Shown: piece by piece, positions 17,020 to 61,027 of the stretch
How the letters are laid out: the number at the start of each line of letters is the position of its first letter
Position numbering within the stretch: the first letter of the stretch is position 1
Source: Ophelia neglecta
Lineage: Eukaryota
Reading direction: 5' to 3'
Length of the DNA: 64,000 nt
NCBI GenBank assembly: GCA_965285935.1
Contig: OZ260664.1
Location: forward strand, 61,504,001-61,568,000
Program-made: the position numbers and the translations under genes
The notes under the pieces: model-generated
The model's database searches: none
Told to the model about the DNA's origin: nothing
The model's input: the letters and a program-made list of their open reading frames with translations, nothing else

Positions 17020-17970
17020 GTATGTTATATTGGAAAATTTATTGGAGTCAGTGGCAGCAGCCTAGTGCCTATACTACTTGTTCTGCGACCGTATGGTGTG
17101 TAAAGCTCAATCCTAAAAAAGATTCTTTTGCCAATTCATCGAAAGCCAGCTGGACGCCATTCCCTACCTTACTGCGGACGCCATTCGCAATTTGGAATCT
17201 TAGTAGTATGAAAGAAATTTCTGACCAAGTTCCTAATTGCAGCGGTGTAAATGAAAAAGTGTGATGGAATATATGGAGAAAACACATTGAGAGGCCGTGT
17301 TCGGCTTTTCAAGGCGTTGGTGTTATGACGAATTTATTCTTAAGCTCCACACCGCGAGTTTCCCATGAGTTTTCCATTTTAAGTGGCATAAAACAGATAT
17401 GTTGAAGACTTGGCTTATACCGGTACATTTGCATTTGTTTCTCTTTGCTGACGTTCTTAATTGCTCTGCTTAGAACAGAACCAGAGATCAACATAATAAA
17501 GCCTACTTTTCCAATATTTTTCCCAGACAGAACGCTCATTAGTGGGATTCGAACCCACACCCACGTACGTAGGTATGGGTACGAATCCCACATCTGACAC
17601 CATGTTAAGATTCTTTCTGATCACTCCTAGTCTCCAGATATTAATAGTACAATATTGATAGTACTACAGACAATATGAGATAAGCTGTGCTATAGGTTTT
17701 TGCTAGAACACAAACTGAAGTAGTACATGGCATGGTAAATACTAGTAGATATCGAGTAGTAATATTACAACACACCGTACCGATTCGACCCCCGCTTCTA
17801 TAGGTCCGTAACAATGGGTTTTAGTAGCGCCAGCCGATACCAGGTAGTGAATTTAAAGGATGGAGAACATAATGATGGTAACAGCCAGAAAAGTAAATTA
17901 TCAATCCAATTGCAGACGTGCTCATAATCCCTTTTAAAAGCATGTGTACTTACATAAATTGAAATGAAAG
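17020..17970 (+). pseudogene. Decayed GT32 glycosyltransferase paralogue
   Basis: Colinear relic motifs: YWSQW, ADAIR (17174-17188; GT32 RADAxR), VMTNLFLSSTPR (~VMTAFMACRPK), NNGF..QPIPGS. Stops and frameshifts. Confidence 0.65.
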
Positions 17971-18299
17971 TTTACATTTAAGCCAAAACGACTAGGTGTG
18001 TTCACCGCCTGGAGTTTCAAATGAAATTTATGATACTGTCTAGTGTATAAGAATGAATTATAGCCCTCAAAACAATTATCTGTCGAAAATATGAGGCAGA
18101 AAGATATGATTGTATTTATACATAACTATCAGAATGTTCTGTTTTTTAACACTGTTGAGGTTGCGTATCTTCAATTCCGATATTGCTAAAAAAAAAAGAA
18201 ATGTAATAAGCCTAATCTTTAACTTTATTTATTGTTGTTATGGTGTATAGACATAAAGAACTTGCATATAATTGAAAAAACAACCCTATATGGTTGAGT

Positions 18300-19250
18300 G
18301 TTCAAAGACGAGCGAGGTCATAATATTTCTCAGCCAATCGCTTTCTTTCCGCTTTGTATTTTACACCTGAATGGCCATTGACTGCTCTTTCACTTCATTG
18401 AACAGTGCAGGCCTCAGTATGGGGACTGTCGCCTTTGGCCATAGTGTTGTAGGCGCAGAAGCCAAAATTGAGAGGTGCTCAAAGAAAAAGATGGGAAATT
18501 GAGCAGTTGAGCGATCGACCAAGCTGGTTTAAACAGAGTGAAATACCATGTGGATGTTGTCCAATCCTGAAAAGGTCCAAGGGGCTGGCTGCTAAGACAT
18601 GGACTGGCAAACAATTTCAAATCTTTATAGGTGAGGGAAAGAAGGAATATTCATAAACATTCAAGCGAAGGGCCACCTATTGTAATAGTACTTGGATAGA
18701 TGACGGCAGTATTAGTAGGGTTTAATTCCCGTTTTCTGAGGTCGGTTGGACCTAAAATTGTAGGCGTGGGTGAAGAGCACATTGCGAAGAAGCCCGCGTT
18801 CGATGAGAGACGCCCAAAATGAAATATAATCGGAAATTGCTGAAAATGCGGCAGTTCATAAGATGCGGGAGGGCGGGGAATTAGTAAATTGAGGAGGTCA
18901 CCCGGCGGGTGTGGATAACTTGACGGGCCTATGTAATAATATGTCTACGGCCAGCAGGAGCTGATTGATCAGTGACCGATATTTTAATCTAGCTGTGGAA
19001 AATTTGTATATTATAAAGGCTTTGGCATTAGCTATTCTACTCTGCTGTCGTCTGCCAATCCAATTACGACTTGTGGCATGACGTTCATTCGTGCCAAGTT
19101 GCCCACAGTCGGTTTTCCCAAGACGCCGGCATCATGTCCCTGGACATCTTGTGTAACCCATACTTCTAGCTTTGTCCTGTTTACCACCGTGTGTTGGTGC
19201 TACTAGTAGGGAACTTTTCTTGTTACGGGTTTGAATCGAGATTTATATCC
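18300..19250 (+). pseudogene. Possible decayed GT32 paralogue (stem region and weak catalytic traces)
   Basis: GHSVVGAE resembles NHTVIGAA of the 27.7 kb relic; RNIHK (~RIIHQT) near 18643. The rest is weak. Confidence 0.35.
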
Positions 19251-20149
19251 CAGCTTTTGAAAACACCGTTGCCAGGAACTGGAAACGCCTCCAACTTCAC
19301 TTTCAGAGGCTTATTCGAATAAGGAACTAGGAAATAGCCTCCAACTGTATTCATAACATAATAATTCTGCCTTATACTCAGATGACTAAGCTGCTTTATA
19401 CTCAGATGACTACAGAGGCCTCTCTAACTAGACGAAAACTGTTAGTTAAATGCCTTTTATTTTACAACCGATGGCTGCAAAAGGTAAAATAGACTAAATT
19501 TTTATGTGCATTAATTAAACAGACAAGTGTTTGTTTCACCTGGCAGAATAATCGTTGCAACGCGGGAATTACAGCAGCGACTTTACTCGGAATATCAGCG
19601 CTTTCGCTGGTCTACGTTACCTTCCCAACAGTGATAAAGTTGCACATGCATGTTAGATGGCATTAACTTCATTCCAACAATTTTCGCGGTTAAGTGTTCC
19701 TTTCAAAGTCTGCAATAAGGGCTGTCCACCGCGAGTATGTTCCTCTGAATTGTGTATGTCCTATATCATTCGCACCTTTTAGTGCAGCAGTCTAACGTTC
19801 CCATTTTGGCTTTGCAATGGACAGACATAAATAAGGAGTAATCACTCCAAGTGCTTGTTGCTTGAGAGAAATTGCCTGCTTTCGGCCTCAGCTCCTTCCG
19901 CAAACACAAAACTGAACCTGGAAAAAGGCGATGTTCAATCTTGTTCGGAGCCCAATCAGTACCCTTTTTGTCATAATCTCCCGCCTCTAATACATCAAAT
20001 CCGTCGACCGAGTCCACACTTTAAGCTGCTTGAGTCGGCTTTGGAAGTAATTTGATGTATTGGAAGCCACCAGGTCGTGTCACAAATGGCGTCGGTATTG
20101 TCTTCATTACCGCAGAGGCTGCAGAGGACGTCGCTTCCGAGACCTGTAT

Positions 20150-21400
20150 TAAAACAACACGAGAATGAATATTCTGCAGTATGCATCTGACATTTACAAT
20201 GAAATCTACATTATATCACAATTTGGCTATAAATGCTAGTTCTCCTGGTCTCATGGCAAGCATCGCTTTTGCTGTTATTATGAAGTTGCCTTGCAGTGTA
20301 ATTTGACATTTGCCGTTAAATAAATTAATCTAGGATTCAACCTTGGAAAGTCGTGATCTAACGTGCCGTTTTTGACAGTGCTGTCGGTGTGTAGACGCCA
20401 TTTTGGCACAGCCCTGAATACTGTCGATATTGGCACGTGTGTTACACGCCTCAATCTCGAGCCTAAATAACAGTCACGGGCTTTATTGTCTCTCTCATCT
20501 TTGGCAACCAATCAACTAGTGGTGAATGTTTAAGTTCAATTATTTTCCCCGGTCTCCACACTGGTCTCACACTGGGCCGATATTCTGTAGTATATAGGAA
20601 TGCCTACTAGAGCAAAAATGGTCATTCTGAAAAACGTGATACATGGAATAAGAAATGCAGAGATAAAACATTATATTAGGGTTGGCAATGGGGAACATTG
20701 GGGGAGGGTTTTGAAAAACTCCAAACTGTAACAGTTCATCTTTAAAGTTCACCCTAACACTAATCTCTACCACTGCCTGCAATTGAACCACCTTTCCTTT
20801 TGTCTCGTATCTGGTATCTGGGTCCTAACAGGTTAAACAGAAAGACGCTTTAATTGGAAACTTTATCCAACTAGATCTAGTCTTAATAAAGAATGTATAG
20901 AAAAATTCTATACAGAAATGAAGAAAACAACTAACATTATGCTAGCTTAGAACTGTCTGTGGAGTACAGCTGCGAAGGCCCAGAAAACACGATTTCAAAC
21001 GAAGGGAAACCATCCTAGCAACATATTATTATTCATTGTCTTCTTTGGGGAAACTGCATTACACCAACTGAGAAAGGATAAACCCATAAAATGAACCCAG
21101 CCTTTGCAGCCGGGCTGCCTGCCGGGGATGTCGGTCATTATCTTAACCGTTTCTTTTTTCCGCTGGCTGATTTTAAGAGCAAATATTGCCTTGCTCAGGA
21201 AAATCACGACTGCAATTCCCTGTTTATGGTCGTTACTTGGTTGTGGTGTATGGTTCTCTGTAGGCTTTTATTCAATCTCAAATTTATGTTCGAAGAAGAG
21301 TAGCGTCATATACCCCTATTTATTTGCCTCACGGGCCATTTGGCAACAAAGGAAATCGGAAGAATCTTTATCCAGCCCTGAGCAGGGCTTGTGGGATTGG
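20150..21400 (-). pseudogene. Decayed GT32 paralogue
   Basis: In order: DIPGRQPGCKGWVH (~AIPGQVKHWVQ, 21091-21132), FISAFL..FFRMTIFAL, ILQNIGPV (~VLKSTGPM), VFRAVPKWRLHTDS (~VYIAPPQWFMPTFDS), HCKATS..QQKRC. Confidence 0.7.
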
Positions 21401-21879: not shown

Positions 21880-23540
21880 AGGTTTTCGTGCCGTGTTCAC
21901 CAACTATTGACATACGCATGACCTAAATATTGAATTCAACAAACGCGCCAAAAAATATCAAGGAAGTCGCCTCATAAATGGCTGAGACAGGGTCGAAAGG
22001 AGGCAGAGCATTTCAGATTTTTGGATCGAGCCTTAACGTTTATCAACTAACGCAGCAGTTTACACAACTAAATATTTCCAATTGGTTAATAAACGGCTGA
22101 GATATGGACATTAAATTTTCAACTTTCCATGATTGCGTTTCCACAGAGACATTATCATGAAACCATGTAGCGGGCCATTTCCTCATCAATGTATATAATG
22201 AGCATTCCGAATTATAAAGACAACGTTATTTAGATACGAAAAACATGTCAACCGTGTAATCAATGCACCAAATTTCGAAGAAATCACTCCTTAAGCGCCG
22301 AGATAGTAACCCTCAATGTTTTAAGACATATTTCACCAGCCTTGAATGTCATGTGATATGGCAAAGTAACCTCGTTTTAACATAAAAAAAATCAGTTATC
22401 CGAAAAAGGTGGGTGTCGGCCCCTGTCGACAGGCGCGAAAAAAGGAAGCGATCCATGGCCGATAAGCGCCTTATTGTGATATTTCATTACACTAGCGGTG
22501 TAAGGAGCTTATGCTGACTGAATATAGCCATATGAAAAGTTCAAAATGTCAATGTTACACGCGGAATTATTGTTGGTGAAGCACAATTTCATATGTGAAA
22601 TTTAGACATTATTATTCGAGGCAATACAATTTTGCACCGACCGATAAATTGTTAAGATATTGCAATTGGAAACTTTGATAACAAGATTTTAATTTGAAAA
22701 ATAAAAGAGAAATAATCTTGATAGATTTAGAGTCTGAAAAAGACCATTGCCCGGCTATTCTTTCATTGATCCAAAATTAGCGTTTCATTCGAATCCGTGG
22801 TTTAATTGAATACGACTAAACATAAAGTTGTTGTATAAATATAGAATTCCCACGACTGACTCCAGAACTTGCTATTGCTATGGATGCTTCCGCTTATGGT
22901 TTCGAAACTTTTCCTTTATCAAGTCCTTGTGTGGTGTATGTTGTCCACATCTTCTCCTGATTGACCCTCTTGTAGTTCAAGTCATCCGGGAACTTTACAT
23001 GGAATAAATATATTGGCATGATAGGCAATGCATAAATCTTGGTTTTTTAGACCAGACGACATGCCCATATTTGTACATTTGCAGATAACGCACGCGTATG
23101 ATCAAGAAATTAATGGACTCTGTCCCCAATGACAAATTGTTTTCTAGGACTAGGCGACCGTATCACATATGAAATCTTCATCTCGGCGCTTGTGCAATTT
23201 CCCTTGCTCGCCCCAGCGTAAAATCTCTGGCATATTGAACATTGTACTCCACTGAACAGTTCTCCATCAACCATATGATTTCCATTTCTATGCCACAGAT
23301 CAGTATTCACCACTGTCATTTTCGAATGACTGTCATATTGAGCTGGTCTAACCGAGGCTTCGCTCCGGGACAATATCACGTACATCATGCTCAATTGCGC
23401 TGATGCCGAGGAAACCTTAATTTAACCCTAACGAAGTTAGTCGAGCAAACATAAAATGAGAAGATCGGCTATTTCTTTCTCCATTTCAAAGATATGCCCC
23501 CGGGATGGCCAGGAGAAACCATTGCCATCTTCTTTCTGCA
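21880..23540 (-). pseudogene. Near full-length decayed GT32 paralogue
   Basis: Acceptor plus ATG near 23547-23529; stem DLWHRNGNH..GELFSG; KFWSQSW (22849-22870); FRACRQG..HP (22410-22440); W..NVLK..G; MA...WF; GHAYV..LVN at the end. Colinear with the intact gene. Confidence 0.75.
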
Positions 23541-23879
23541 GCTAGCCTGCAAATAAAACTTGACATGCTAAACGAGTTACGACTATTGTAGTTTGAGTTC
23601 ATTTTTATGTTACCCAAGGCCCGATATCAAGACAGACCTGTCTTATTATTGGTAGTGTTTTTTCTACTACTGATATATTTAGTATAGTCCTACGTTCATT
23701 CAAAATGGCCGCCTTAGTGTATCCTCAAATCCCATTAATGTGCAATAGTTCCTCATTAAAATGAGACAATTTAAATTTAAAACGTCAACATATGAGTTAT
23801 TCCTGGCTTAAAGTACAGTCATATACAGTTTTTTAAAAAAAGGCTTCCGCATGAGGCATCGCTGTCCGTCGTTAATTTA

Positions 23880-24750
23880 ATTTATTCTCATTCAGATAAA
23901 TTCAGATAATCAGGAGAAACAAACAAGTTTCCATAGTCTGTGGAGTTTGGTTTGTAGCAGTTAAAGTTGCAGTGCACAGCCCCAGAGAGATGCCTCCAGA
24001 CTCTGGCAGTCTGTTGCTCATCCATCCAAACACGATTTAAAACGACGTCCCTTCCGTCTAGCTGTTCCAGTTTCTGCTCACGCCACCTCTTTATTACAGT
24101 CTTGGAGAAAGATTGCCGCCTGGATTGGGGTTGGCATGTGGTATTAGTTAGCATTGCGTCTTCCGTAGCCAGAGATCAATAAGACGTCCCTAGTGTCCAA
24201 ACCGACTGGACTTGAACCATACACCAAACATTTTGTTCACCCAAAGAAGGCATTATTGAGTTAACACATATAAAGCAACTGCCATGCCCAAGGAGTTACT
24301 CCCTCTAAACCTTAGCTTACAGTCAAATCGCTCTGAAATTGTCACGACCGGCAACTTAAAGAGTACAGCGTTTGGCTGTAAACACTTTGCAGGACCTATG
24401 TGGCGATCAATCGAGATCACGGCTGTAAAACCTTAGGGGTTAAGGGTTATCACGCCGAGGCACACGGTGGGCTTTAATGCAGCTTTTGAATTATTCGACG
24501 AATACTTCAAAGTGTTCTGTTCTGTTGATCTATGTGGTCTACAATTCGAACGAAATGCCGATGGAGAAAATCTTGGCAAAACTATCGTTTGAACATTAGA
24601 TTCACCGTTCTGGTGACATATTAGAATACTTCCTGAGACCGAAAGTTCTATTCAATGTGACAAATGTATTATCAAACTTACCCTGATACATCAAATTGGT
24701 AACCTTAATACTCGAGGAGAGAACATTTTTTCAGTCATGTGTCCGCCTGG
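23880..24750 (-). pseudogene. Decayed GT32 paralogue, closely related to 46400-47200
   Basis: ~600 bp colinear nucleotide similarity to 46.55-47.15 kb. LTNTTCQPQ...FSKTVIKR (~TAFMACRPKHPFLKFVI); LFVSPDY (~VYIAPPQW). Confidence 0.6.
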
Positions 24751-25829: not shown

Positions 25830-27950
25830 CTACAAAAAGACGCATTGTGCTAGTATCACTCCCTACTACCCCTGTTCCACGGAATAATCGACTTGTCGTA
25901 TCTTTTCATATTCTTAACCAGGGAGATAAATGTCGTACCACCTTTGCTTCTATATCTTTCCAGACACAGCGACATCCTCTGTCTATATTGATATACGCGT
26001 CAAGAATTTCAAATGCTGTGTGTACCCCATTAGCTGGTTTTCTTCATATTCTCCAGCCGAATGTTTCTTGCAGTCTTTCCAACTTCGCATGGATAATTAA
26101 TTGTAAATTACACTCATATTTTCTGCATTAGGCATTAGACTGAGCTATTCCCACGGTGCCTATTTAGTTAGTATCTTTGAAGACTTCAATTATCTTGTCC
26201 ACAATCAATTATGTTCAAATAAGTGATCTGGAAGAATAATGACATTCCGAAACGGAAGGAGATTTTTTTCTAAAGAACAGCCTGGATGACGCATATCGGA
26301 CGAATGTAGACTTCAATGCAGTCTCTTGCACAATAAAAGCTTAAAAATTAAATGTTTAAAAAAATAAAATAAAATGCCATTGAATAATAGTCGTCTTGCC
26401 AATTCTTCCGGCGGACCTCTCCAGAGCGCGCCACTTGTACGATTTGACCCCCAATAAGCAACTATGCTAGGTCTGTGTGCTTACAAGTGTGCAAAGACAC
26501 TGTCGATTGAGCTCTCTCTATATGGCATTATATGACTCCTAATGACTCTTGAAATGTTGAAGACATCATCCTAAAAGACATTCCGCAGCGATCGCAAGTT
26601 ATATGCAAGGGGACTATTAGCAAAAATTGCATAGTTTTTGGAAAAACCAAAAATAACATGGAAATTCACATTCATTGGAAATTTGCCATGGCCATGGAAT
26701 TAAAAACAAAACATTCCGTAGAAGTGAAGACGTTTATGTACAGATCTTAGCCTATAATGTGAGAATGAATAACCCCTTGCCTGAGTGAAGATACTGTTGA
26801 TTGTTGTAACCCCTTTGGTTGGTGTCACTTTGGTGTTGGTGTACAGCGGTCGGTTTTTTTGTGTTGATCTGATTATTGCTCGGATCACCCTCCCTCCTCG
26901 GAGTTGGTTTCTTTAATTTTATTATTTGCTTTATATTAAGTTTTAATTTTTCTTCAGGACATTTTTGATAATGAGGAGCTAGCTATCGCTTCATAAGTTC
27001 ATAAAGTTACGGGTTTTCAATTAGTGGTGACATATTTTTCATTTATGCTATTTTTTGCCTAATATGGCTCATTTGTAACTATACGGTCACAATAATGTTA
27101 TATAATTAGGTTTAGTTTTTTTGTAACGTTTATAAATATAAGGTCCGTTCCATTAAAGAAAATTAAGATATTTGTGATATTTAGTAGTAAATAATACCCA
27201 TTTACATTTAGAAGTCCTTAAAACAGGAAAACTATACCTGGCTTACCTCCATTTTAAAATTTGGCTTTCAGGTCAGGCTATATAGGCCTACGTTTAAAAC
27301 TGCTTACTCGATGATTCCTGGTTTTGTATCGCACCACAATATTTAAAAAAGTCTATTTTAAACAAAGGCAGGTGTAATACTATTTAAACGGCATTCATCA
27401 AATACAGGTGTAGAAATATCTCTGCCATTCTCAGGTCTGATGAACAATCCCGATAGGGCATGTCAGGTCTGGTAGTTCTGGTGGATAATTGCCATAGCCA
27501 CCTGATCAAGGTTTATGTTGTCCCTGGGAGACCACAAATCAGCGACCACAGCGTTTTTGTTTCGTGCTTCCTCGACCGTTATCGGTGAGGTAATCTTCCT
27601 CCCTTCGGCAAACCCTTCTCCAGGGAGCAGTGCCAAATAAATCCTCGCCAGTTTACCTCGAACTTCATCGAAAAGGCCGCCCGCCGCTCCAATAACCGTA
27701 TGATTTCCATTTCTTCGCCATTGATCAGTATCCATCTCTCCCAAATTGTATTGGCTTTCTGTCAGACTGGGCTCGGTTGGATTGCCCTTCCCCCTTTAAT
27801 TCCGAGACAATAATTGGTGTATATCCTTCAACAGAACCGCTGTAAAAAAGGCACCGATAGAAATGCCATGAAAAAACCCATTCCGGCAAAAGAATGACGG
27901 AGCGCTCTTGTCCCAAAAAATAAACACTAAAATAGCCTATATAGACTCCT
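25830..27950 (-). pseudogene. Decayed GT32 paralogue (exon 1 clear, exon 2 weak)
   Basis: Hydrophobic TM-like stretch; GLFDEVRGKLARI (~DVFNGLRGKLRGI); IVHQT*E at 27428-27448 (~IIHQTWE); then SVFAHL (~GVFADL) and SYKW..PPEELARRLLF near 26390-26490. Confidence 0.75.
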
Positions 27951-31710: not shown

Positions 31711-31762
31711 AAGTTTTGAAAACCACGTAAAACCCCAAACAACAACAACAACAACAACAACC
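31711..31762 (+). mobile_element. SINE 3' end with (AAC)n tail
   Basis: aagttttgaaaaccacgtaaaaccccaaac(aac)n matches the end of the 12364 copy (aagttttgaagccacgtaaaactcaaaat). Confidence 0.55.
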
Positions 31763-34870: not shown

Positions 34871-34882
34871 GGTAGTATCAGG

Positions 34883-47209: not shown

Positions 47210-47398
47210 TGTAATGTATTGATAGTAGTATGGAAGATATTCCGTGTTTAGTTCGTATTGTAGTTTTGCCATGCAAAAACACATCCGGGTCTTCTGTAGC
47301 AGCCATTTTCCTGTCAACCTTGGAATAAATAATAGTTCGTTATCAAATCCGAATTTGTTACTGTTTTGATGGGTCATCCACAAACGGGTAACATAACA
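47210..47398 (+). repeat. 5' LTR
   Basis: Direct repeat of 51704-51892; contains AATAAA. Confidence 0.98.
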
Positions 47399-47401
47399 AA
47401 T

Positions 47402-47414
47402 TGGCGACGAGGAT
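47402..47414 (+). promoter_or_regulatory. Primer-binding site, probably tRNA-Ser(GCU)
   Basis: TGGCGACGAGGAT is complementary to ATCCTCGTCG-CCA, the recalled 3' end of metazoan tRNA-Ser(GCU). Confidence 0.8.
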
Positions 47415-47450
47415 CTATAGGAGCGGGATTGCTTACAGTGAGTGGAGATC

Positions 47451-50400
47451 ATGGCGGTATACGGGAATATGGACATATTTTCACCGGAGACGGAGTCTTG
47501 GATTTCCTACTCTGAAAGGTTTGACAATTACCTGCTGGCAAACAAGGTCACGGACGAAGCTCAAAAAAAGGCTCTATTCCTGACGGCATTGGGTAAAGTA
47601 ACATACAATGTTTTACGATCCCTGGTAGCGCCAGAAAAAGCTAGTGACAAAACTTTGGCACAGTTACAGGATAAACTGAAGTCGTATTATTGCCCTAAAC
47701 CAAGTAAAATTGTCACCAGATACAAGTTTAATACATGTGTTCAGAAAAGTGGACAGTCAGTGGCGGATTTTCTAGCGGAATTGAGAGCTTTGAGCGAAAA
47801 TTGTGAGTTCGATAACATGAATGAATGGTTATTGAGCAGACTTGTTTGTGGTATCAGAGACGAAAGTACACTTAAGACATTTTTGTCTGAGTCAGAACTG
47901 ACCTTAGAAAAAGCAGTTGGTATGGCTTTAAGCAGAGAGCTGGCTACTAAAGGAGTGGCTGAAATAAGAGGCATGACCACAGAGGAGAAGCCAATGTCTA
48001 GTACCTCTGCAGTCAATAAACTGAAAATCACATGTTGGCGATGTCTAGGAGATCATAAACCAGATCAGTGTAAATTCAAGGATTCATCTTGCTTCTTTTG
48101 CAATACCAAGGGGCACATTTCCAAGGCATGTAGGAAAAAGAAAAATAAGCAGGAGAAAAAGAAGAAGAAATTTAGGCAGAAACAAGGAGAGGCCAAGTTT
48201 TTGGAAACTGTCAATGCTTCTGCTTCTCATGAGCTGGGTGAATATGAGACTTTATATACACTGAGAAACCTCACTAAGCCCTATTGTATATCAGTCAATA
48301 TTGAAGGGAAAAATGTTAGGATGGAGGTTGATACAGGTGCATCTGTGACCGTAATGAACATTGATAATTTCAAAAAGTTGTTTGAAAAAACAGACCTTCA
48401 ACCTGCCAAGACTGTAATACGAGGCTACACGGGAGAGGTAGTACCAATGGCTGGAGAAGCACAAGTAATGGTGAATCATAATAACCAGTCTCAAGTCTTA
48501 AATCTATGCATCACAAAACAAGGACCAACTTTGTTGGGCAGAAATTGGATGGAGCTCATAAAACTTAGCTGGGACCAGGTTAATGTTTTGAGTTTAGACC
48601 ACCCAGCACAGGCTTTGGTTGAACAATATAACGAGTTGTTTGACAATAAGTTAGGATGTATGAAAGGAGTGCAGGCCAAAATCATAGTGACCGATGATGC
48701 ACAGCCAATATTTCATAAAGCCAGAACAGTGCCACTGGCACTAAAAAACAAAGTTTCATCCGAGCTGGAGAGACTTGAACGAGAAGGTACCATAGAGAGA
48801 GTAACACACTCTGATTGGGCAGCACCCATAGTACCTATATTAAAATCTGACGGCACAATTAGGATCTGTGGTGATTACAAGGTGACTGTAAATAGAGTAT
48901 CAAAGGTGGAGCAGTATCCAATTCCCAAAATAGAAGAAATACTGTCAGTGATGAGTGGGGGGAAAAGTTTTTCCAAGCTGGACTTGTCAGCGGCATATCA
49001 ACAGTTGGAGCTTGAGGAGGAGTCTAAGCAGTATACAACCATAAATTCTCATTTGGGTTTGTTTCGGTACCACCGATTACCCTATGGAATTTCCTCCGCT
49101 CCCGCTATTTTTCAACGGGCATTGGAAAACTTACTCAAGGGCATTCCCTTCACAATTGTACGTCTTGACGACATTTTGGTATCAGGCCGGAATGACAAAG
49201 AACATTTAGCTAACCTCCAGGAGATTTTCAAACGCCTTCAGGAAGCGTGTGTTAGACTCAAGGCAAGCAAATGTCAGTTTTTTGAGCCACAAGTAGTATA
49301 CTGTGGAAATTTGGTGAATCAGAATGGTGTGAGACCAGCACCGGGCAATGTTAAGGCCATATTGGAGGCTCCAAGACCTACAGATATCACTGAAGTCAAA
49401 AGCTACCTAGGAATGTTAAATTACTACCACAGATTCCTGCCGAGGTTGTCTACCCTAATGGAGCCACTTCACCGGCTGATTAGGAAAGATGAAACATGGT
49501 CATGGGGTGATCTTGAACAGCAAGCATTTGAGGAGTCAAAGAAGCTATTGACTTCTGAAAATCTACTCGTACATTACGAGACGGATAAAGAACTGGTCCT
49601 TGCTTGCGATGCCTCGCCGTATGGCGTGGGATCGGTGTTATCTCATGTGATGGAAGATGGAACAGAACAACCAATAGCATATGCCTCACGTACACTCAAC
49701 CAAGCTGAACGTAATTATGCTCAAATAGACAAGGAAGGACTGAGCATAATTTTTGGGGTAAAGAAGTTTCATCAGTTTTTATGGGGCCGGAATTTCAAGA
49801 TTTTTACAGACCACAAACCGTTACTCGGAGTGCTGGGGGAGAAAAAACCTGTTCCACAAATGGCATCACCACGTGTTGTCAGATGGGCATTAACATTGGC
49901 TGCATATGAATATGAACTGATTTACCGCCCAGGCGCTGCTCATGCTAATGCTGACGGCTTAAGCAGATTACCTTTACCAGATCAGCCGAAGTATGTACCA
50001 GTACCAGAAGAAAGTATCAGTATGTTAGAACACATGGATGAGACAACCGTGAAAGCAGAAATGATACAGCAGTGGACCAGAAGGGATCCGGTACTATCAC
50101 AGATTATGCGGTATGTGCAAACAGGGTGGCCAGAGAAATGTCCAAATGAAAAACTCAAACCCTATTTTAATAGACAATCTGAATTGAGCGTGGACAAAGA
50201 CTGTTTGTTTTGGGGAACCAGGGTCATTATTCCATTACCAGGAAGGAGTGCGATACTCAAAGAATTACACGAGGCACATCCTGGAATGGTTAGAATGAAG
50301 GCTCTGGCCAGGAGCTATGTTTGGTGGCCCGGTTTAAACAGTGACATTGAAACCACAGTCAGAAAATGTGAATCTTGCCAAATGAATGCCAAAAGTCCGA

Positions 50401-51419
50401 TGCTAGCACCCCTTCATCCGTGGGAGTATCCAGCGAGACCGTGGCAGCGCCTTCATATCGATTATGCGGGACCTTTTCTAGGCAAGATGTTTTTGGTGTT
50501 AGTTGACGCTTACTCAAAATGGATTGAGGTTTTCCCACAAACCACATCCACCAGTACAGCCACAGTTAACAGTCTAACGGAGTGTTTTGCGACACACGGA
50601 GTTCCGTCGCAGATAGTAAGTGACAACGCCAGTTGTTTCACTTCGGAGGAATTCGAAGCATTTCTAGACCGAAATGGAATTCACCATATAACGTCGGCAC
50701 CATATCATCCGTCGACAAATGGCCTTGCGGAACGAGTAGTACAAACTTTCAAAAACAGTATGAAACGCATGGAACTATCAGATTCCGATAAGAAGGACAA
50801 TTTGAAATTGAGAGTAGCAAAATTTCTATTTCAATACAGAATCACCCCTCACGCAACTACAGGTAGATCACCTTCAGAACTACTTATGGGGAGAAAATTG
50901 TACACTAGACTTGATTTACTAAGACCTGATGTCACCAGAAAAGTGCAGGCTCAACAAAATATTCAGAAACAACAGCATGATCGTACTGCAAAGCTACGCA
51001 AATTTCAGACTGCAGATACAGTATACGTGCGTGACTATCGACCAGGTCATAAGTGGATGCAAGGACTAGTAGAATATCGGACAGGTCCATTGTCTTATCG
51101 TGTTAGACTACCATCAGGTGACTTAGTTCGTCGTCACCAGGACCAAATGCGTCAGCGCCTCGATAGAGAAATACCAGTCAGTCCGGAAGCAACACTGACT
51201 GTACTGCCTCCGTCCGAGAGTACTGTTTCTACGGACATCAAATCACCAGTACCTCAGACCGCTATCGAAAACATGCCAGTTACTACACTTGAGATGCCTA
51301 TCGAGGTGCCAGCTCAGCCAAGCGTAACTGAGAAAATATGTACATGTACACCTACTCCACGTTATCCAATGAGGACTAGGATCCGCCCAAGGCGTTTTCA
51401 AGATTATGAAATAACTTAA
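47451..51419 (+). CDS. Gag-Pol polyprotein (~1322 aa from the first ATG)
   Basis: Two Zn knuckles (CWRCLGDHKPDQC, CFFCNTKGHISKAC), protease VDTGA, RT (LPYGISSAP, RLDD), RNase H (CDASPYGVG, TDHKPL), integrase HHCC and D-D-E (HIDYAGP, SDN, NGLAER). PR-RT-RH-IN order. Confidence 0.97.
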   Translation: MAVYGNMDIFSPETESWISYSERFDNYLLANKVTDEAQKKALFLTALGKVTYNVLRSLVAPEKASDKTLAQLQDKLKSYYCPKPSKIVTRYKFNTCVQKSGQSVADFLAELRALSENCEFDNMNEWLLSRLVCGIRDESTLKTFLSESELTLEKAVGMALSRELATKGVAEIRGMTTEEKPMSSTSAVNKLKITCWRCLGDHKPDQCKFKDSSCFFCNTKGHISKACRKKKNKQEKKKKKFRQKQGEAKFLETVNASASHELGEYETLYTLRNLTKPYCISVNIEGKNVRMEVDTGASVTVMNIDNFKKLFEKTDLQPAKTVIRGYTGEVVPMAGEAQVMVNHNNQSQVLNLCITKQGPTLLGRNWMELIKLSWDQVNVLSLDHPAQALVEQYNELFDNKLGCMKGVQAKIIVTDDAQPIFHKARTVPLALKNKVSSELERLEREGTIERVTHSDWAAPIVPILKSDGTIRICGDYKVTVNRVSKVEQYPIPKIEEILSVMSGGKSFSKLDLSAAYQQLELEEESKQYTTINSHLGLFRYHRLPYGISSAPAIFQRALENLLKGIPFTIVRLDDILVSGRNDKEHLANLQEIFKRLQEACVRLKASKCQFFEPQVVYCGNLVNQNGVRPAPGNVKAILEAPRPTDITEVKSYLGMLNYYHRFLPRLSTLMEPLHRLIRKDETWSWGDLEQQAFEESKKLLTSENLLVHYETDKELVLACDASPYGVGSVLSHVMEDGTEQPIAYASRTLNQAERNYAQIDKEGLSIIFGVKKFHQFLWGRNFKIFTDHKPLLGVLGEKKPVPQMASPRVVRWALTLAAYEYELIYRPGAAHANADGLSRLPLPDQPKYVPVPEESISMLEHMDETTVKAEMIQQWTRRDPVLSQIMRYVQTGWPEKCPNEKLKPYFNRQSELSVDKDCLFWGTRVIIPLPGRSAILKELHEAHPGMVRMKALARSYVWWPGLNSDIETTVRKCESCQMNAKSPMLAPLHPWEYPARPWQRLHIDYAGPFLGKMFLVLVDAYSKWIEVFPQTTSTSTATVNSLTECFATHGVPSQIVSDNASCFTSEEFEAFLDRNGIHHITSAPYHPSTNGLAERVVQTFKNSMKRMELSDSDKKDNLKLRVAKFLFQYRITPHATTGRSPSELLMGRKLYTRLDLLRPDVTRKVQAQQNIQKQQHDRTAKLRKFQTADTVYVRDYRPGHKWMQGLVEYRTGPLSYRVRLPSGDLVRRHQDQMRQRLDREIPVSPEATLTVLPPSESTVSTDIKSPVPQTAIENMPVTTLEMPIEVPAQPSVTEKICTCTPTPRYPMRTRIRPRRFQDYEIT

Positions 51420-51703
51420 ATTCAAGTTATTATATTAAGAGTAAGCACAGGATCAGAATAATATCCTGTTTATATTATTAAGAGATTGAGGTAGTCTACC
51501 CTCACCTCTAGTAGAAAGTTATTAGTCGTGTTCTTTAACTTTAAAAGTAAAAATTTCTGAACGTTATGCATTTAATAGTAAAAACAACTATGAAGAGTTG
51601 ATTGAACATTTTATTTCAAAATGATGTTACATATGAAACTGAATGACCTGAACATTACAGTGATACCTTATACGAGGAATTTTCAAACCTTAGGGGGAGG
51701 GAA

Positions 51704-51892
51704 TGTAATGTATTGATAGTAGTATGGAAGATATTCCGTGTTTAGTTCGTATTGTAGTTTTGCCATGCAAAAACACATCCGGGTCTTCTGTAGCAGCCAT
51801 TTTCCTGTCAACCTTGGAATAAATAATAGTTCGTTATTAAATCCGAATTTGTTACTGTTTTGATGGGTCATCCACAAACGGGTAACATAACA
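51704..51892 (+). repeat. 3' LTR
   Basis: Direct repeat of 47210-47398, preceded by the PPT. Confidence 0.98.
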
Positions 51893-52049: not shown

Positions 52050-52900
52050 TCAGCTTCTTTAACTGTTCAAGGACATTAACGGCATCCTCGCTTCAATGCA
52101 AATATGCTAATATTACTCCCCGGATATTGACTTTTTCTGACGTGACCGAACCCTTAAAGTCGTATTGGATGTTCCAACACCTATAACAGTCAGCAATTTG
52201 TTTTTGAAGGCACATGGGCTGAATATTGAAATTTAATCGAGGGTGAGCTATATAAATAATGTTCCCCTTTAGAATGTGATTGTATTTTTCATATAACTAA
52301 GGCTGGACATTTTTGTATTTCTCGGTTTATTGAGTATCTCTCCTGCTTAATTACCATATTATTTAACTGCTAGAAATACTTGATTCTAGCAGACGCCACT
52401 TTTGGCCATTGGCGATATTGTGCAGGCCATCCTTTGTGGCAGGTGAGTCCGAAGGCATGTCTGACCTTCGAAAGGACAATCAGGATTTGCCAATTTCAAG
52501 TAGTGTACACTGGTGTGTTCAGAACAAGTGGGTGCATTTGGCAGATTCGCATTTCACTAGATTAAAGGCACAATGGATCTAGTGTTGCATTAATAAGTGA
52601 CGTCGCCGAAATACTACAAATAATTCTTTTATCGCGAACTTAGGGCATAAAATGCAGTCAATACATTTGTCAATTTAAAGTTTGGGTGCCTTTAGATGTC
52701 TTCCAGCGTCTCCCTCTTCTCAATGATGCATCCCTAAGCCGGTTTGTCGTGTTGTCAAGAGGAACAGGCGTCTTCATTGGCAACAAACGGAGTTTATGGG
52801 TTTATCGTAAGTGCCATTTTTGAATGTCAATTAATGTAAGGATAATGATGGCCGTGGCACGCTAACCGGTCCATCCTCTATGTGCTCTATAGCAATCAAA
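52050..52900 (-). pseudogene. Decayed GT32 paralogue
   Basis: One frame reads L*YFGDV.....TRSIVPL......EHTSVHY (52500-52619, ~LYQYGGVFADLDVESLLPL...EHQALLY), then TCLRTHL and IYIAHP. Confidence 0.7.
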
Positions 52901-53282
52901 CCCGTCACAACGACACTAGTCCAGCAGTGAATATGCCAGGCGAACGACCTCAATTATCTCTTCCCTCATATTTCACAGCTGAGGCTACAAGAGATACCAA
53001 ATGGCAATCAATGTGAGCAGAAGAAATAACACAAATGCATTACTATTGTGATACAAAGAGAAGATCTATATCACAATTACCCCAATATTTAGTTCTATAA
53101 TATTCCACATATTGGATTTCCATAAATATCCTGTGGCTTTGTATTGGAATTGTGTATTGTGTGAGACGATAAAAAGGTTGTTGGTCACCAAATACAGGGT
53201 TCTGTGTTTATTCAGTCATGGCCCAAACTGATGTCTCTGTATTCAACACTCTTTCGTAGACTCTCGATGGAAGGTTCTACCT

Positions 53283-54262: not shown

Positions 54263-54269
54263 TAATAAT

Positions 54270-54750: not shown

Positions 54751-55499
54751 CAAAAAGCATTTCATAAATTGACAAAAGAAATGTCTGGAGAAAAAACGAA
54801 TGGAAATAATACCTCCGCCCCGTATATAAATTGGAACGCCGCAACACTAAAGTATTTCAAATAACATTGAAGCCTCGCACAATTAATTGTGAATCACAGA
54901 AAAACTTAAATTGGTGCTTAATGAATAGAGACATTTCTAACGTGCCTTGTTGATGCTTTGTTATTAAGCAGAAGGTTCAACAAATCCATGAGATCAGGAT
55001 ATTCTTTGCCTTGTCTAACGGGTATACACTTTTTCTTTTTCCATTTTTCTTCTAGAATAAAACTCAGATGTAAGCTGGTTGCCCCCCCCCCCTAAATGAA
55101 ATGACGTTTAGAACATTGTCCAAAGACACTTAGATGCCTTTGCCTCCTATATAAAATAATGTGCTAACTATTGCTCGTATTTTAAAGTCGTCGCCTTGAG
55201 CATTGATAAACATTATTACCCACCCTATTTTAAGAGTATTGGCATCCTGCCGACGAAACCCGGCTAGGTTTTGCTTGCTTTTGTATTGCCACATTACGTC
55301 TCGTAGTTAATGCTCAATAACGATATTGAATTAATGTCGGTAATGCGTACACAGGGCGGGCAGGAAAGAGAAGGAAAACGCAGTTATTTACCTTTACATT
55401 TTCACTGCAATATTTTCTTCTTTATAAAACCTCAGAAGGCATATTATGAAAACTTGTTATTGTTTAGAAATCATTCTTCTCCAGAAGGCCAAGAAATCG

Positions 55500-57401: not shown

Positions 57402-57649
57402 TATATAGACTTTAACATTGAGATAATTTGGAGCCTGTCCTTAGGGAATGGTTAAATTTGGTGAACGATTTTTCTTCTAGTCCTAGTGCTTAATTTGGTA
57501 CAAGTCAAGGCCCTCATCACTATTTAAACCAATTCGCACAGAATGGTGCATCGAAATTTAATAAGTAACTCTGTCCGGTCAATTTTGTTATCGCAGATGG
57601 TGACTTTCCGCTTCTTAGGAGGCTTTAATGACACCAGCCCCCGGCGATG

Positions 57650-58700
57650 TTATCACTCAAGGCTTTCTGCATAAAAGTAACGCTCGATGCAGTCGGTGCC
57701 GAGCTCGCGCTGGTCTCCGCTCGGCACATGCACAAAGAGTGAGATCAGGACTCGAGCAGCGCCAGACACAGCTTGTAGTAATTTCCTGCTGAACGTCTGC
57801 TTACACGTTTCAACAGCGCCTTTATAGAGAACTGCAGTGTTGGGAAATGACAAGGGCATCAAGAGAACGTAACCTTACAAGGGCAGAGTAGCTTGGCTTA
57901 AGGGGAGATGTCAAGCAAATAGAGCTGTCGTGGAAGGTATCGTCCAATCCGTGGCCATACATACCCGATCTGGCGGATAGAACCCAGTGCGGTAGCCACT
58001 CGGTGATTACTTGGGTGAATGGTGCTTTTAGTAGAGACTGGCAACAGGGAGATGTCTTGTTTAGAATACCTGATTTGAAGAGCATACAAGGAGGAGGGCA
58101 ACTGTGCCGGATTTGGTGTGCTTGTTGGTACGAAATCACAATAGGATTCGAGTGTGGTTGCGTCTAAACAAATAATATTGCTTGGGAATGCAGTAATTTT
58201 CAAAAAATATTTGTAAAGGACGTTTTTACCAACATGAATTATATGATCCTAAGCGTTTGATTCGCTTTTAAGGGGTGTTTCAATGACATACTTAGGTAAG
58301 TTCAAATAATTAAAAACACACTGGTGACAAGTATCGTGTATATTTGCTTAGTCTAGAACATTTACAATCAGGGATTTGCATGGCAGCATATGCGCAGAAT
58401 GAAGAAAACTTTTGCGAACGAGAGACTTGTACACGTGTCACCCGCAGGTGTTTCTTCGCCACTTTTATAGTGAGAGTAATTTTCAGTTTTAACGGCAGGG
58501 GAATTTGACATCTACCGCCTACAATGCTCCTTGTTTGATGCAGTTATTTCCATACCCCTTAATGAGACTAGATATTGTAGATAGGCCTATCGTTTATCAA
58601 AACTTGCACCTGACAAGGAGAGCGCTCTAGTTTTAAAGTTCATTGGACCTGTCTTGGTGGTGGTGTTTGTTAAAATATCTTCATATTATCAAGTGGTACG
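57650..58700 (+). pseudogene. Decayed GT32 paralogue immediately upstream of the intact gene
   Basis: VLGND; GDVKQIELSWK....WPY (57904-57960, ~GQVKHWVQSWRTNHPDWEY); QGDV; YK.GG..ADL; KHTG; VHVSPA.CFFATF (~VYIAPPQWFMPTF); HW..SW at 58641. Confidence 0.8.
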
Positions 58701-59137: not shown

Positions 59138-59347
59138 GTATTTGTACATTTTTACGCTTTAATACAAACGTAGCAAAGTCTTCTCTCAAACGATTTGATT
59201 TCCATTAAAAAATCTTTGTCACCTCAGACCATTTACTGGCTATTTCAGCATTTGTACCATTTGTAATCATGCCAAATTCTATCAAATATGAAACAATAAT
59301 TGCACCTGTTTTTGTTTGTAGGTGAAGAAATACGTGTTCGATTGAAA

Positions 59348-59884
59348 ATGGCTGTCACAATATGCTTGAGAAGAAAGATAAACCATCGGAAATATGGCGC
59401 TTATCTGTTGCTCTCATTTTCCTTATTCAGTGTTTTATATTTGTGCATCACCCACAACACTTTAATTGAGTGTGAAATAGAGAATACTATATTGGAGCGC
59501 GAAGGCCAACAAGGCCTTGCCTCGTTGCCCATTGCAAACAGACAGCACACAGGAATGGTGTTGGGAAATGATTCCAAGGAAATATATGAGGTAATCAGGA
59601 CTCAGGGCGACGTTTTTAATGGACTTCGTGGCAAATTACGAGGGATTTTACGGCACGGTGGCCCAGGCAGCCTGGACAACCCGCAGGGAAATGATTATTA
59701 CACAAATGGCATAGGAGAAAATGAACATAACAAAGGCACCGACACGAATATTTTGTCTCGAAGTACTATCAAGAAACCCGGCCCTTATCCGGCGGATAAG
59801 ACAGCAGAATCAAAAGGAGCTGACAAGCATCGCATTCCACGAATTATTCATCAGACCTGGGAGGATTTGGCCATCCCCGGGCAG
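59348..59884 (+). CDS. GT32 glycosyltransferase coding exon 1 (basic tail, TM anchor, stem, IPRIIHQTW)
   Basis: MAVTICLRRKINHRKYG, hydrophobic AYLLLSFSLFSVLYLCI, ...HRIPRIIHQTWEDLAIPGQ|gtagg. 179 codons, phase 0. Confidence 0.9.
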
Positions 59885-60235
59885 GTAGGGTTTTTATACG
59901 GCTGCGATAATGCGAGACTATTGATTTATATTCCATACTGAATTTCTAAAAGTACCATCACTGTTTTCATTAACAATAATTGTTGCACTGTTAAGGTTGT
60001 TTCCATAGCGGCCTTGTTTTCTACGAGTAGTCATATTCATATTTGAAAATGACTAAGTCACATATATAGTTACAGGTGAACTGCATTAAGTCACAGCTGT
60101 AATAAGTTAAAGCTGTATCATCTGTAGGATAAATAATACTTTCCGAAATTCTAAATGGGGTCGCATTTAGTCTTCTTAGTGCTACTATTCAATAGTTTCA
60201 AAATAAACAAGTCCCATTTTTATTTCTGACTCCAG

Positions 60236-61027
60236 GTGAAACACTGGGTTCAGTCGTGGAGGACAAACCACCCTGACTGGGAGTATTGGTTCTGGACAGA
60301 TCGAGGAAGCAGACATATGATTCACGATAACTTCCCAACATCGGTGTTATCCACGTATGCCGATTACCCTTACAACATTAATAGAGCAGACGTGAGGAAA
60401 CTTCTAGTCTTGTATCAGTACGGCGGAGTGTTTGCTGATCTTGATGTGGAAAGTCTACTTCCTTTGGATGATCTACTTTCAAAATACCAGTGTATAATTG
60501 CTCAGGAACCGTTAGAGCACCAAGCATTACTTTACGAATACAAACATTCACGTTACGTTATGACTGCTTTCATGGCATGTCGACCAAAACATCCATTTTT
60601 AAAGTTCGTAATCGACGCCCTACCTCAATATGCCAACAGAGCCTTGACGCTTGACTGGAACGATAATGTTTTAAAAAGTACCGGACCTATGTTTCTTTCA
60701 GAGGTGCTGGACCAGTACCTCAACAACTCGTCATACACAGGAAGCACCGAGGAGTATGTGTATATAGCCCCACCACAGTGGTTTATGCCAACCTTCGACT
60801 CCATAAATATGGACACCTATGTCCAAAAATGCTCAAACATATCAGCTGTGCCTTCTAAGCAAAAGGGCGTTTGCAAAAGATTAATGGCCAATGACTTTAA
60901 AAATACACCGATAGTGGGAGCATTCACCAATCATCACTGGCTTCACTCCTGGGGGTATGGATTCGTCCCGAAAGGACATGTTTCTATAGAACAAGTTGTT
61001 AATAATTTTACAAAACTAGATAGCTAA
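60236..61027 (+). CDS. GT32 glycosyltransferase coding exon 2 (catalytic DxD domain, OCH1/SUR1-like); total ~442 aa
   Basis: tccag acceptor. SWRTNHPDWEYWFWTD, RADVRKLLVLYQYGGVFADLD, MACRPKHPF, STGPMFL, HHWLHSW; TAA stop; AATAAA at 61092. Confidence 0.93.
   Translation: MKHWVQSWRTNHPDWEYWFWTDRGSRHMIHDNFPTSVLSTYADYPYNINRADVRKLLVLYQYGGVFADLDVESLLPLDDLLSKYQCIIAQEPLEHQALLYEYKHSRYVMTAFMACRPKHPFLKFVIDALPQYANRALTLDWNDNVLKSTGPMFLSEVLDQYLNNSSYTGSTEEYVYIAPPQWFMPTFDSINMDTYVQKCSNISAVPSKQKGVCKRLMANDFKNTPIVGAFTNHHWLHSWGYGFVPKGHVSIEQVVNNFTKLDS

What the first reader, a model, noticed from the sequence alone, without database searches (positions are those of the whole stretch)
17020..61027. Hidden ~42 kb array of about 20 decayed GT32 glycosyltransferase paralogues beside one intact gene
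Seen: the region between Cbl and the intact GT32 gene has no long host ORF, but frame-hopping translation repeatedly recovers the intact gene's ordered motifs (TM/stem RGKL, IxHQTW, WVxSW..HPxWEY.FWTD, RADA.R..LY.YGG..D.D, QEP..H, ACRP.HPF, TGP.FL, V..AP..WF, HW..SW). They recur every 1-2 kb on both strands. Known: GT32 enzymes (OCH1, SUR1, A4GALT, A4GNT) are retaining alpha-glycosyltransferases that shape surface glycans and glycolipids. Inference: this locus underwent a large birth-and-death expansion of a glycan-modifying family, then collapsed to one survivor in this window. That would fit a past glycan/pathogen arms race or mucus specialisation. The copy count is approximate and weaker copies may be false.
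Basis: partly seen in the sequence, partly recalled or inferred. Interest (0 to 1): 0.9.

Follow-up and report, generated by a model that had tools for sequence, protein, structure and literature searches.

The report
Four GT32 pseudogene fragments, not twenty
Next to one working glycosyltransferase gene, this invertebrate DNA holds only four badly decayed fragments of old gene copies rather than about twenty, which is the ordinary debris of an old local gene duplication.

Summary
The intact gene is real. It is a two-exon, 442-aa GT32 (PF04488) type II membrane glycosyltransferase at 59348-61027 (+), downstream of Cbl. The claimed array of about 20 relics every 1-2 kb on both strands is not there.

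Every protein-level test of 17-59 kb stayed at shuffle level, except for one exon-1 relic. The tests were tblastn, a family HMM on six frames, PF04488, exact motif counts and a frameshift-aware alignment.

DNA profile searches, seeded from a paralogue 41 kb downstream, find four GT32-derived fragments. All are on the minus strand and all are broken:
- exon-1 relics at 23.2-23.6, 27.4-27.9 and 55.2-55.5 kb;
- the 3' third of exon 2 at 33.0-33.3 kb.

Two of them have matching flank blocks. These sequences occur nowhere else in the 762-Mb genome, so they are not transposons.

Across 264 kb the locus holds 2 intact genes, 1 near-complete pseudogene and about 10 fragments. Many of the fragments are secondary copies of already truncated relics. 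The rest of the span is intergenic DNA, with a young Ty3/gypsy element at 47.2-51.9 kb and SINE-like repeats.

The birth-and-death idea is right in kind but about five times too large in number, and it is ordinary.

The parts
59348..59884 (+). Exon 1 of the intact GT32 gene: cytoplasmic tail, transmembrane anchor, stem, RGKL and IIHQTW. The splice donor GT is at 59885-59886.
   Evidence: ORF and translation; sequence read; 51% aa identity to exon 1 of the paralogue at C7:61606775-61607341.
60236..61027 (+). Exon 2 of the intact GT32 gene: catalytic domain with the D-L-D (DXD) motif. The acceptor AG is at 60234-60235 and the stop codon at 61025-61027.
   Evidence: PF04488 E 4.4e-17. Homologues at 75-78% identity, all carrying PF04488. 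Och1 structure 9n3s at E 4.7e-4. Ka/Ks 0.09 against the paralogue.
57538..57983 (+). Upstream block U1 of the gene unit, shared with the paralogue's upstream region and with other units of the locus.
   Evidence: nhmmer E 1e-32 to 105333-104907 in window-equivalent coordinates. Out-of-window profile E 2e-59.
55182..55459 (-). Relic R4: a decayed fragment of exon 1 (first ~100 codons) with 4 frameshifts and 4 stops. It lies head-to-head with the intact gene.
   Evidence: nhmmer E 4e-12 and 1.9e-11 with the paralogue's DNA. Out-of-window profile E 8e-12. Alignment.
52744..53258 (-). Downstream block D of relic unit R4. It matches the sequence 1.0-1.6 kb 3' of the paralogue's stop codon. Exon 2 is not recognisable between it and the exon-1 relic.
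   Evidence: nhmmer E 1.2e-26. Profile E 1.8e-60. In a global alignment the interval is 41-46% identical (background level), against 56-68% in the flanks.
33556..33944 (-). Relic R3, upstream part: it matches the sequence just 5' of exon 1 in both the gene and the paralogue.
   Evidence: nhmmer E 1.1e-5 with the gene and 1.4e-8 with the paralogue.
33033..33288 (-). Relic R3, coding part: the 3' third of exon 2 (about residues 195-262) with 6 stops and 3 frameshifts. It is the only catalytic-domain remnant in 17-59 kb.
   Evidence: nhmmer E 0.003 with the gene alone. Out-of-window four-sequence profile E 2.5e-6. The protein-level score of 52-55 is noise level on its own.
30448..30953 (-). Downstream block D of relic unit R3.
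   Evidence: nhmmer E 3.8e-20. Profile E 6.7e-54. The family is confined to this locus genome-wide.
27429..27892 (-). Relic R2: the best-preserved exon-1 relic (paralogue residues 30-178) with 8 frameshifts and 3 stops. It keeps NGNH..V..RGKL and I.HQT, and is the only relic visible at the protein level.
   Evidence: Frameshift-aware score 100 against a shuffle maximum of 69. nhmmer E 9.8e-24. Profile E 5e-74. Genome-wide matches lie only in C7:61.53-61.66 Mb. Alignment.
23171..23558 (-). Relic R1: an exon-1 relic (paralogue residues 30-119) with 3 frameshifts. It belongs to a different clade from R2.
   Evidence: nhmmer E 3.5e-11. Profile E 2e-28. Tree clade B with the copies at 139 and 145 kb. 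Alignment.
19814..20195 (+). Locus-restricted duplicated block F1. It is one anchor of an old inverted segmental duplication, 19.8-30.9 kb against window-equivalent 123.2-131.9 kb.
   Evidence: Genome-wide there are only two other copies, both in this locus.
23945..24514 (+). Locus-restricted duplicated block F2. Other copies lie at 46569-47130 (+) and window-equivalent 127843-128271 (-).
   Evidence: No dispersed copies were found genome-wide.
44464..47130 (+). F7-F2 block, colinear in inverted order with window-equivalent 129.8-127.8 kb. No GT32 coding remnant was detected in it.
47210..51892 (+). Young Ty3/gypsy LTR retrotransposon inserted into the span. It is not GT32-derived, and it accounts for the only long ORF in the span.
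   Evidence: Pfam RVT_1, RNase H, integrase and protease domains. The 189-bp LTRs are 99.5% identical. The LTRs run TG...CA and are flanked by a CTTGT target-site duplication.

Best explanation
The span is ordinary intergenic DNA of an invertebrate chromosome. The best named homologues are bivalve and nemertean proteins. It lies at the edge of an old, locally duplicated GT32 gene cluster.

One ancestral two-exon unit (U1-U2-exon 1-intron-exon 2-D, about 4-5 kb) was copied several times in tandem and in inverted orientation over at least 150 kb. Two copies stayed under purifying selection: the window's gene and one 41 kb downstream. The others became unprocessed pseudogenes and were eroded by substitutions, indels, deletions and transposon insertions.

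Four such remnants lie in the window (units R1-R4), all on the minus strand and all non-functional. Three keep only part of exon 1, and one keeps only the 3' third of exon 2.

The excess of exon-1 fragments arises mainly because two already truncated relics were copied again as part of larger segmental duplications.

Shown: the presence, coordinates, strand, brokenness and locus-restriction of the relics; the clade structure; and selection on the intact pair. Inferred: the order of events, and that the intact gene encodes a Golgi-type retaining alpha-glycosyltransferase.
For: - DNA-level hits with the paralogue as query: E 1e-23, 4e-12 and 3.5e-11 for exon 1, plus U and D blocks.
- Profiles that leave out all window copies confirm exactly three exon-1 relics and one exon-2 relic. 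Nothing else scores below E 0.1, and the reversed control gives nothing better than E 1.5.
- An iterated search converges on 13 exon-1 and 5 exon-2 copies in 264 kb.
- The relic, D, F1 and F2 sequences match only this locus in the 762-Mb genome.
- All 10 exon-1 relics are broken: nine carry 1-8 frameshifts, and six carry stops, among them the one without a frameshift.
- The exon-1 tree has three clades with support of at least 99/98. Clades B and C consist only of exon-1 fragments.
- Colinear inverted anchors D, E1-C, F2 and F1 link 19.8-30.9 kb to 123.2-131.9 kb.
- Gene against paralogue in exon 2: Ks 1.15, Ka 0.10.
- A near-full pseudogene with stops lies at C7:61675763-61676853.
- Simulated neutral exon-2 relics are detected up to about 0.7 substitutions per site, so recognisable copies would have been found.
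Against: - Copies decayed beyond about 0.8-0.9 substitutions per site are invisible to every method used, so the true historical copy number could be higher.
- The exon-2 relic R3 is significant only with a profile (E 2.5e-6) and sits at noise level in protein space.
- The unit boundaries and the segmental-duplication history rest on a few anchors each.
- No RNA data were available to show that the intact gene is expressed or that the relics are silent.
Confidence: 0.85

Rival explanations
1. One reading: about 20 decayed GT32 paralogues tile the 42 kb on both strands, left by a large expansion that collapsed to a single survivor.
For: Four real relics exist, and one of them (27.4-27.9 kb) does show RGKL and I.HQT after frame-hopping. 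GT32 is a large family in this genome, with 52 PF04488 matches. Very old copies would be undetectable.
Against: - No hits beyond the four fragments in tblastn, family HMM, PF04488, frameshift-aware alignment, motif counts or DNA profiles, each with shuffled or reversed controls.
- No relic lies on the plus strand.
- A second intact copy lies 41 kb away.
- About 4.7 kb of the span is a gypsy element.
Confidence: 0.03
2. The exon-1 fragments are remnants of a variable-first-exon cluster of the UGT1A or clustered-protocadherin type. In that layout many alternative 5' exons (tail, transmembrane anchor and stem) once spliced to a shared catalytic exon.
For: - Exon-1 copies outnumber exon-2 copies 13 to 5 in 264 kb.
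- Exon 1 ends in phase 0 at a clean donor.
- Four plus-strand exon-1 relics (124-146 kb) lie upstream of a plus-strand exon-2 pseudogene at 172 kb.
Against: - Every extra exon 1 is broken.
- Some units carry their own exon-2, D or U blocks, as whole-gene duplicates would.
- Clades B and C look like repeated copying of two truncated relics inside larger blocks.
- In the window the three exon-1 relics face away from the intact exon 2.
Confidence: 0.05
3. The weak DNA matches are chance, or belong to a repeat family that happens to overlap the gene, so the span holds no GT32 relics at all.
For: Identities are low (57-62% to the genes). Protein-level tests miss three of the four fragments.
Against: - Unbiased profile E-values run from 5e-74 to 2.5e-6, while the reversed controls give nothing better than E 1.5.
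- The matches fall in coding exon 1 and translate to homologous peptides in the right order.
- The flank blocks U and D lie in the expected order and spacing.
- Genome-wide the sequences occur only in this locus.
- A related species' exon 1 matches R1 and R2 at 77-79% over 80-100 bp.
Confidence: 0.02

Closest known systems
Unprocessed (duplicated) pseudogene fragments inside tandem gene clusters, the classic birth-and-death pattern of multigene families such as olfactory receptor, MHC and globin clusters (from general knowledge)
   Same: Local duplication in direct and inverted orientation. A few copies are kept under purifying selection. The others are broken by frameshifts and stops, truncated, interrupted by transposons and copied again as fragments.
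   Different: The family is GT32 and the host is an unannotated invertebrate genome. The relics are near the limit of detection, because even the two intact copies differ by Ks of about 1.15. The surviving fragments are biased towards exon 1.
GT32 retaining alpha-glycosyltransferases (Och1/Hoc1, Sur1/Csh1, A4GALT, A4GNT); Pfam PF04488 Gly_transf_sug
   Same: The intact gene has the PF04488 domain, a DXD motif (D-L-D), an HQ.W motif before it and an N-terminal type II membrane anchor. The nearest solved structure by sequence is the Och1 alpha-1,6-mannosyltransferase, 9n3s.
   Different: Identity to any characterised enzyme is low (E 4.7e-4 to Och1 over about 80 residues). No Gb3_synth (PF04572) domain was reported at E<=0.001. 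Donor, acceptor and linkage are unknown. The closest homologues are unnamed metagenome or invertebrate proteins.
Variable-first-exon clusters (UGT1A, clustered protocadherins)
   Same: Many copies of a 5' exon encoding the N-terminal part, and fewer copies of the 3' exon.
   Different: All the extra first exons here are broken and lie in both orientations. They group as secondary copies of truncated relics. No evidence of shared-exon splicing was found.

Membership tests
GT32 / PF04488 (intact gene) | Match to the Gly_transf_sug sugar-binding region above Pfam's gathering score | tested here: met
   63 bits against a cut-off of 23, E 4.4e-17, residues 4-85 of the exon-2 product. In the own-genome search the match scores 66.2 bits.
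GT32 / PF04488 (intact gene) | DXD metal and nucleotide-sugar binding motif inside the domain | tested here: met
   The exon-2 translation reads ...YGGVFADLDVESL..., which contains D-L-D. The motif is conserved in the paralogue.
GT32 / PF04488 (intact gene) | Type II membrane topology: short basic N-terminal tail, one transmembrane helix, then a stem | tested here: inconclusive
   This was read directly from the translation: MAVTICLRRKINHRKY, followed by a hydrophobic stretch of about 19 residues. No topology predictor was run.
GT32 / PF04488 (intact gene) | Retaining alpha-glycosyltransferase activity with a defined donor and acceptor | not testable with these tools
   The only support is weak sequence similarity to the Och1 structure 9n3s (E 4.7e-4).
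   There are no protein-level hits except one exon-1 relic. With exon 2, 0 of 29 bins exceed the shuffle 95th percentile. Motif counts are 8 against 7.6 +/- 2.7 in shuffles.
   There are four fragments, all on the minus strand, at 23.2-23.6, 27.4-27.9, 33.0-33.3 and 55.2-55.5 kb.
Unprocessed pseudogene relics of a local duplication | Homology to the parent gene that includes non-coding flanks or intron, in the same order as in the parent | tested here: met
   U2, the exon-2 remnant and D lie in order in R3, and exon 1 then D in R4, at parent-like spacing. Clade C copies share about 140 bp of intron after exon 1.
Unprocessed pseudogene relics of a local duplication | Disabling lesions (frameshifts, stops, truncation) | tested here: met
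   The three exon-1 relics carry 3-8 frameshifts and 0-4 stops. R3 has 6 stops. No relic has both exons.
Unprocessed pseudogene relics of a local duplication | Not a dispersed repeat: copies confined to the locus | tested here: met
   Genome-wide DNA searches with R2, D, F1 and F2 hit only C7:61.52-61.66 Mb.

The most novel reading that the evidence does not exclude
The 13-to-5 excess of exon-1 over exon-2 copies across the 264-kb locus could be the fossil of a variable-first-exon GT32 cluster. In it, many alternative anchor-and-stem exons would once have spliced to shared catalytic exons, as in UGT1A or the protocadherins. That arrangement has not, to my knowledge, been described for Golgi glycosyltransferases.
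Probability: 0.05. Interest if true: 0.6.

Novelty: new member of a known kind. Interest (0 to 1): 0.15.

Why it matters
It matters mainly as a correction. The striking claim of a 42-kb graveyard of 20 glycosyltransferase genes shrinks to four fragments, which is normal debris at the edge of an old duplicated gene cluster.

There is also a methods point. Frame-hopping by eye over 42 kb in six frames recovers short motifs at chance level, so similar "hidden fossil array" notes from the same reader (GT31 and TRPM2-like, elsewhere in this genome) need the same controls.

One practical lesson came out of the work. The relics became visible only when a neighbouring paralogue and relic-to-relic profiles were used, not with the intact gene's protein.

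For annotation, the locus yields two conserved GT32 genes of unknown specificity in an invertebrate.

Tried and rejected
- tblastn of both exon products, at default and very sensitive settings: only self hits, and scores equal to shuffles.
- Family HMM on six-frame fragments: nothing above 3.9 bits outside the gene.
- Whole-genome searches with PF04488 and with each exon protein: no hit in window 1-59 kb.
- GT32 paralogues from other chromosomes as queries: only the intact gene.
- Pfam on the ten longest remaining ORFs of 17-47 kb: no family, so there is no sign of another host gene or of further transposon proteins.
- Rfam on the whole window: nothing.
- Looking for exon 2 inside relic unit R4 by global alignment: background identity only.
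- Synteny in a relative: the one fetched contig (75% protein identity) shares only the GT32 gene with this locus and is flanked by Ninjurin genes. It is too distant to place the relics. A second relative's contig gave no DNA.
- RNA evidence: no RNA runs are on record for this organism.
- A 20-kb own-genome DNA search was swamped by a high-copy SINE-like element and said little about the rest.
- Literature: two full-text searches found nothing on GT32 pseudogene arrays or invertebrate GT32 expansions.
- The spliced protein was never joined.


Full report
**Setting.** The window is C7:61504001-61568000 of a 762-Mb animal genome. The best named relatives of its GT32 protein come from a bivalve and a nemertean, so the host is probably a lophotrochozoan. 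Cbl is confirmed: its Cbl_N and Cbl_N3 exons lie just upstream of the window on the plus strand.

**The intact gene.** Two ORFs, at 59300-59941 and 60236-61027, join cleanly. The donor is CAG|GT at 59884/59885 and the acceptor AG| at 60235/60236, both in phase 0.
- Exon 2 carries PF04488 (E 4.4e-17) and a D-L-D motif.
- Exon 1 carries a basic tail, a hydrophobic anchor, RGKL and IIHQTW.
- The nearest solved structure by sequence is the Och1 alpha-1,6-mannosyltransferase 9n3s (E 4.7e-4).
- I searched each exon on its own by reference.

**Testing the claimed array at the protein level.**
- tblastn of both exon products finds only the gene itself.
- With word size 2 and E up to 1000, the best scores in 17-59 kb (20.8 bits) are no better than ten shuffles (20.4-29.3 bits) or the reversed sequence.
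- An HMM built from 23 family members and run with --max on all 4787 six-frame fragments scores the two real exons at 413.6 and 16.0 bits. Everything else scores 3.9 bits or less.
- PF04488 and each exon protein, searched over the whole genome in six frames, give no match in window 1-59 kb at E<=10.
One hundred order-2 Markov shuffles give 7.6 +/- 2.7.
- I wrote a frameshift-aware Smith-Waterman, in the manner of tfastx. With exon 2, which holds nearly all the listed motifs, 0 of 29 1.5-kb bins exceed the shuffle 95th percentile (real maximum 61, shuffle maxima 58-77).
- With exon 1, one place stands out: 27406-27893 on the minus strand, scoring 100 against a shuffle maximum of 69. The alignment shows real homology, with RGKL and I.HQT in order.
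- A planted-relic simulation shows the method detects full exon-2 relics up to about 0.7 substitutions per site with indels, and loses them at 0.9 or more.

**What is there at the DNA level.** The intact gene's DNA gives only weak hits. The own-genome search revealed two more copies: a second intact gene at C7:61605805-61607341 (minus strand, 84% aa identity in exon 2) and a stop-ridden pseudogene at C7:61675763-61676853.

Using the paralogue's DNA as query, nhmmer finds exon-1 relics at 27.4-27.9 kb (E 1e-23), 55.2-55.4 kb (4e-12) and 23.2-23.6 kb (3.5e-11). It also finds upstream and downstream flank blocks.

I then assembled 264 kb around the window and iterated profile searches. They converge on 13 exon-1 and 5 exon-2 copies, and reversed-sequence controls give nothing.

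To avoid circularity I rebuilt the profiles from copies outside 15-59 kb only. In 15-59 kb they find the following:

| Part | Hits in 15-59 kb (all minus strand) | E-value |
|---|---|---|
| Exon 1 | 27430-27865 | 5e-74 |
| Exon 1 | 23171-23413 | 2e-28 |
| Exon 1 | 55183-55355 | 8e-12 |
| Exon 2 | 33033-33263 | 2.5e-6 |
| D block | 52744-53253 | 1.8e-60 |
| D block | 30448-30953 | 6.7e-54 |

The next best exon hits have E of 0.1 or more, and one of those lies inside the gypsy element.

**The relics are locus-specific, not transposons.** Genome-wide DNA searches with relic R2, the D block and two further duplicated blocks (F1, F2) hit only C7:61.52-61.66 Mb.

**Anatomy of the four relic units.**
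- **R4:** exon 1 at 55459-55182, then D at 53258-52744, at parent-like spacing (about 1.7 kb against 1.9 kb). The interval where exon 2 should lie is only 41-46% identical in a global alignment, which is background. The flanks are 56-68% identical.
- **R3:** upstream block at 33944-33556, the last third of exon 2 at 33288-33033 with 6 stops, and D at 30953-30448. Exon 1 and most of exon 2 are deleted.
- **R2 and R1:** exon-1 pieces only.
- All ten exon-1 relics in the 264 kb are broken: nine carry 1-8 frameshifts, and six carry stops, among them the one without a frameshift.

**History.** The exon-1 tree has three well-supported clades:
- clade A: gene, paralogue, 72k, 55k and 136k;
- clade B: 23k, 139k and 145k;
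- clade C: 27k, 97k, 124k and 158k.

Clades B and C contain only exon-1 fragments. The anchors D, E1-C, F2 and F1 lie colinear but inverted between 19.8-30.9 kb and window-equivalent 123.2-131.9 kb. So much of the exon-1 excess comes from re-copying two already truncated relics inside larger segmental duplications.

The cluster is old. The two intact copies differ by Ks 1.15 with Ka 0.10 in exon 2 (Ka/Ks 0.09). A related species' exon 1 matches R1 and R2 at 77-79% over 80-100 bp, which suggests these lineages are ancient.

**The rest of the span.**
- A young Ty3/gypsy element lies at 47210-51892. It has a 1325-aa open polyprotein, 189-bp LTRs that are 99.5% identical, and a CTTGT target duplication. 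I describe it only.
- A SINE-like element with more than 2900 candidate copies lies at 34860-35037.
- There are small locally repeated elements and an interstitial (TTAGGG)n-like run at 25726-25792.
- The ten longest other ORFs of 17-47 kb match no Pfam family, and Rfam finds nothing.

**Verdict.** The gene, Cbl and the lack of long host ORFs are right. One relic carrying two of the listed motifs is real, and three more fragments exist at the DNA level.

The birth-and-death reading is right in kind but modest in scale. It is also not a collapse to one survivor, because a second conserved copy lies 41 kb away and the genome has dozens of other PF04488 matches. An arms-race or mucus role is untested.

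**Limits.**
- Copies older than about 0.8-0.9 substitutions per site cannot be excluded. They would also leave no motifs to see.
- No RNA data exist for this organism.
- Synteny with the one available relative was uninformative.

Noticed in passing
window 47210-51892 (+): An apparently complete, young Ty3/gypsy LTR retrotransposon. It has one 1325-aa gag-protease-RT-RNaseH-integrase ORF, 189-bp TG...CA LTRs that are 99.5% identical, and a 5-bp CTTGT target-site duplication. It is described only.
   Followed up: partly
G000:C7:61605805-61607341 (-), window-equivalent 101.8-103.3 kb (L014 5802-7317): A second intact two-exon GT32 gene lies 41 kb downstream of the window's gene, convergent with it. 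Identity is 84% aa in exon 2 and 51% in exon 1, with Ks 1.15 and Ka/Ks 0.09. It was the key query that exposed the relics.
   Followed up: yes
G000:C7:61675763-61676853 (+) (L015/L024): A near-full-length GT32 pseudogene. Its exon 2 is 62-71% identical to the window's gene and carries several TAA and TAG stops. Only about 60 bp of exon 1 are left.
   Followed up: partly
G000:C12:41.10-41.30 Mb, 46.62-46.79 Mb and 56.49-56.52 Mb: Other chromosomes carry much larger GT32 (PF04488) clusters with open frames. One of them is a run of at least 12 short partial matches (profile positions 63-92 only) within 200 kb at C12:41.1-41.3 Mb. The genome has 52 PF04488 matches in all.
   Followed up: no
window 851-3469: A 47-bp tandem repeat of about 56 copies (91% matches) lies in the Cbl part of the window, presumably intronic.
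   Followed up: no
window 34860-35037 and 31709-31763: A very high-copy, young SINE-like element: more than 2900 candidate copies genome-wide, and the scored ones are 94-97% identical. The two window pieces match adjacent parts of the element but lie 3.1 kb apart and in swapped order, on either side of relic unit R3.
   Followed up: no
window 25726-25792: A short interstitial telomere-like run, (AGGGTT)n with about 11 imperfect copies, lies between relics R1 and R2.
   Followed up: no
L033 11349-13290 (-): In the related species' contig the GT32 gene is followed by two Ninjurin (PF04923) genes. No Ninjurin similarity was found in the 264 kb around the window, so the neighbourhood is not conserved.
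   Followed up: partly
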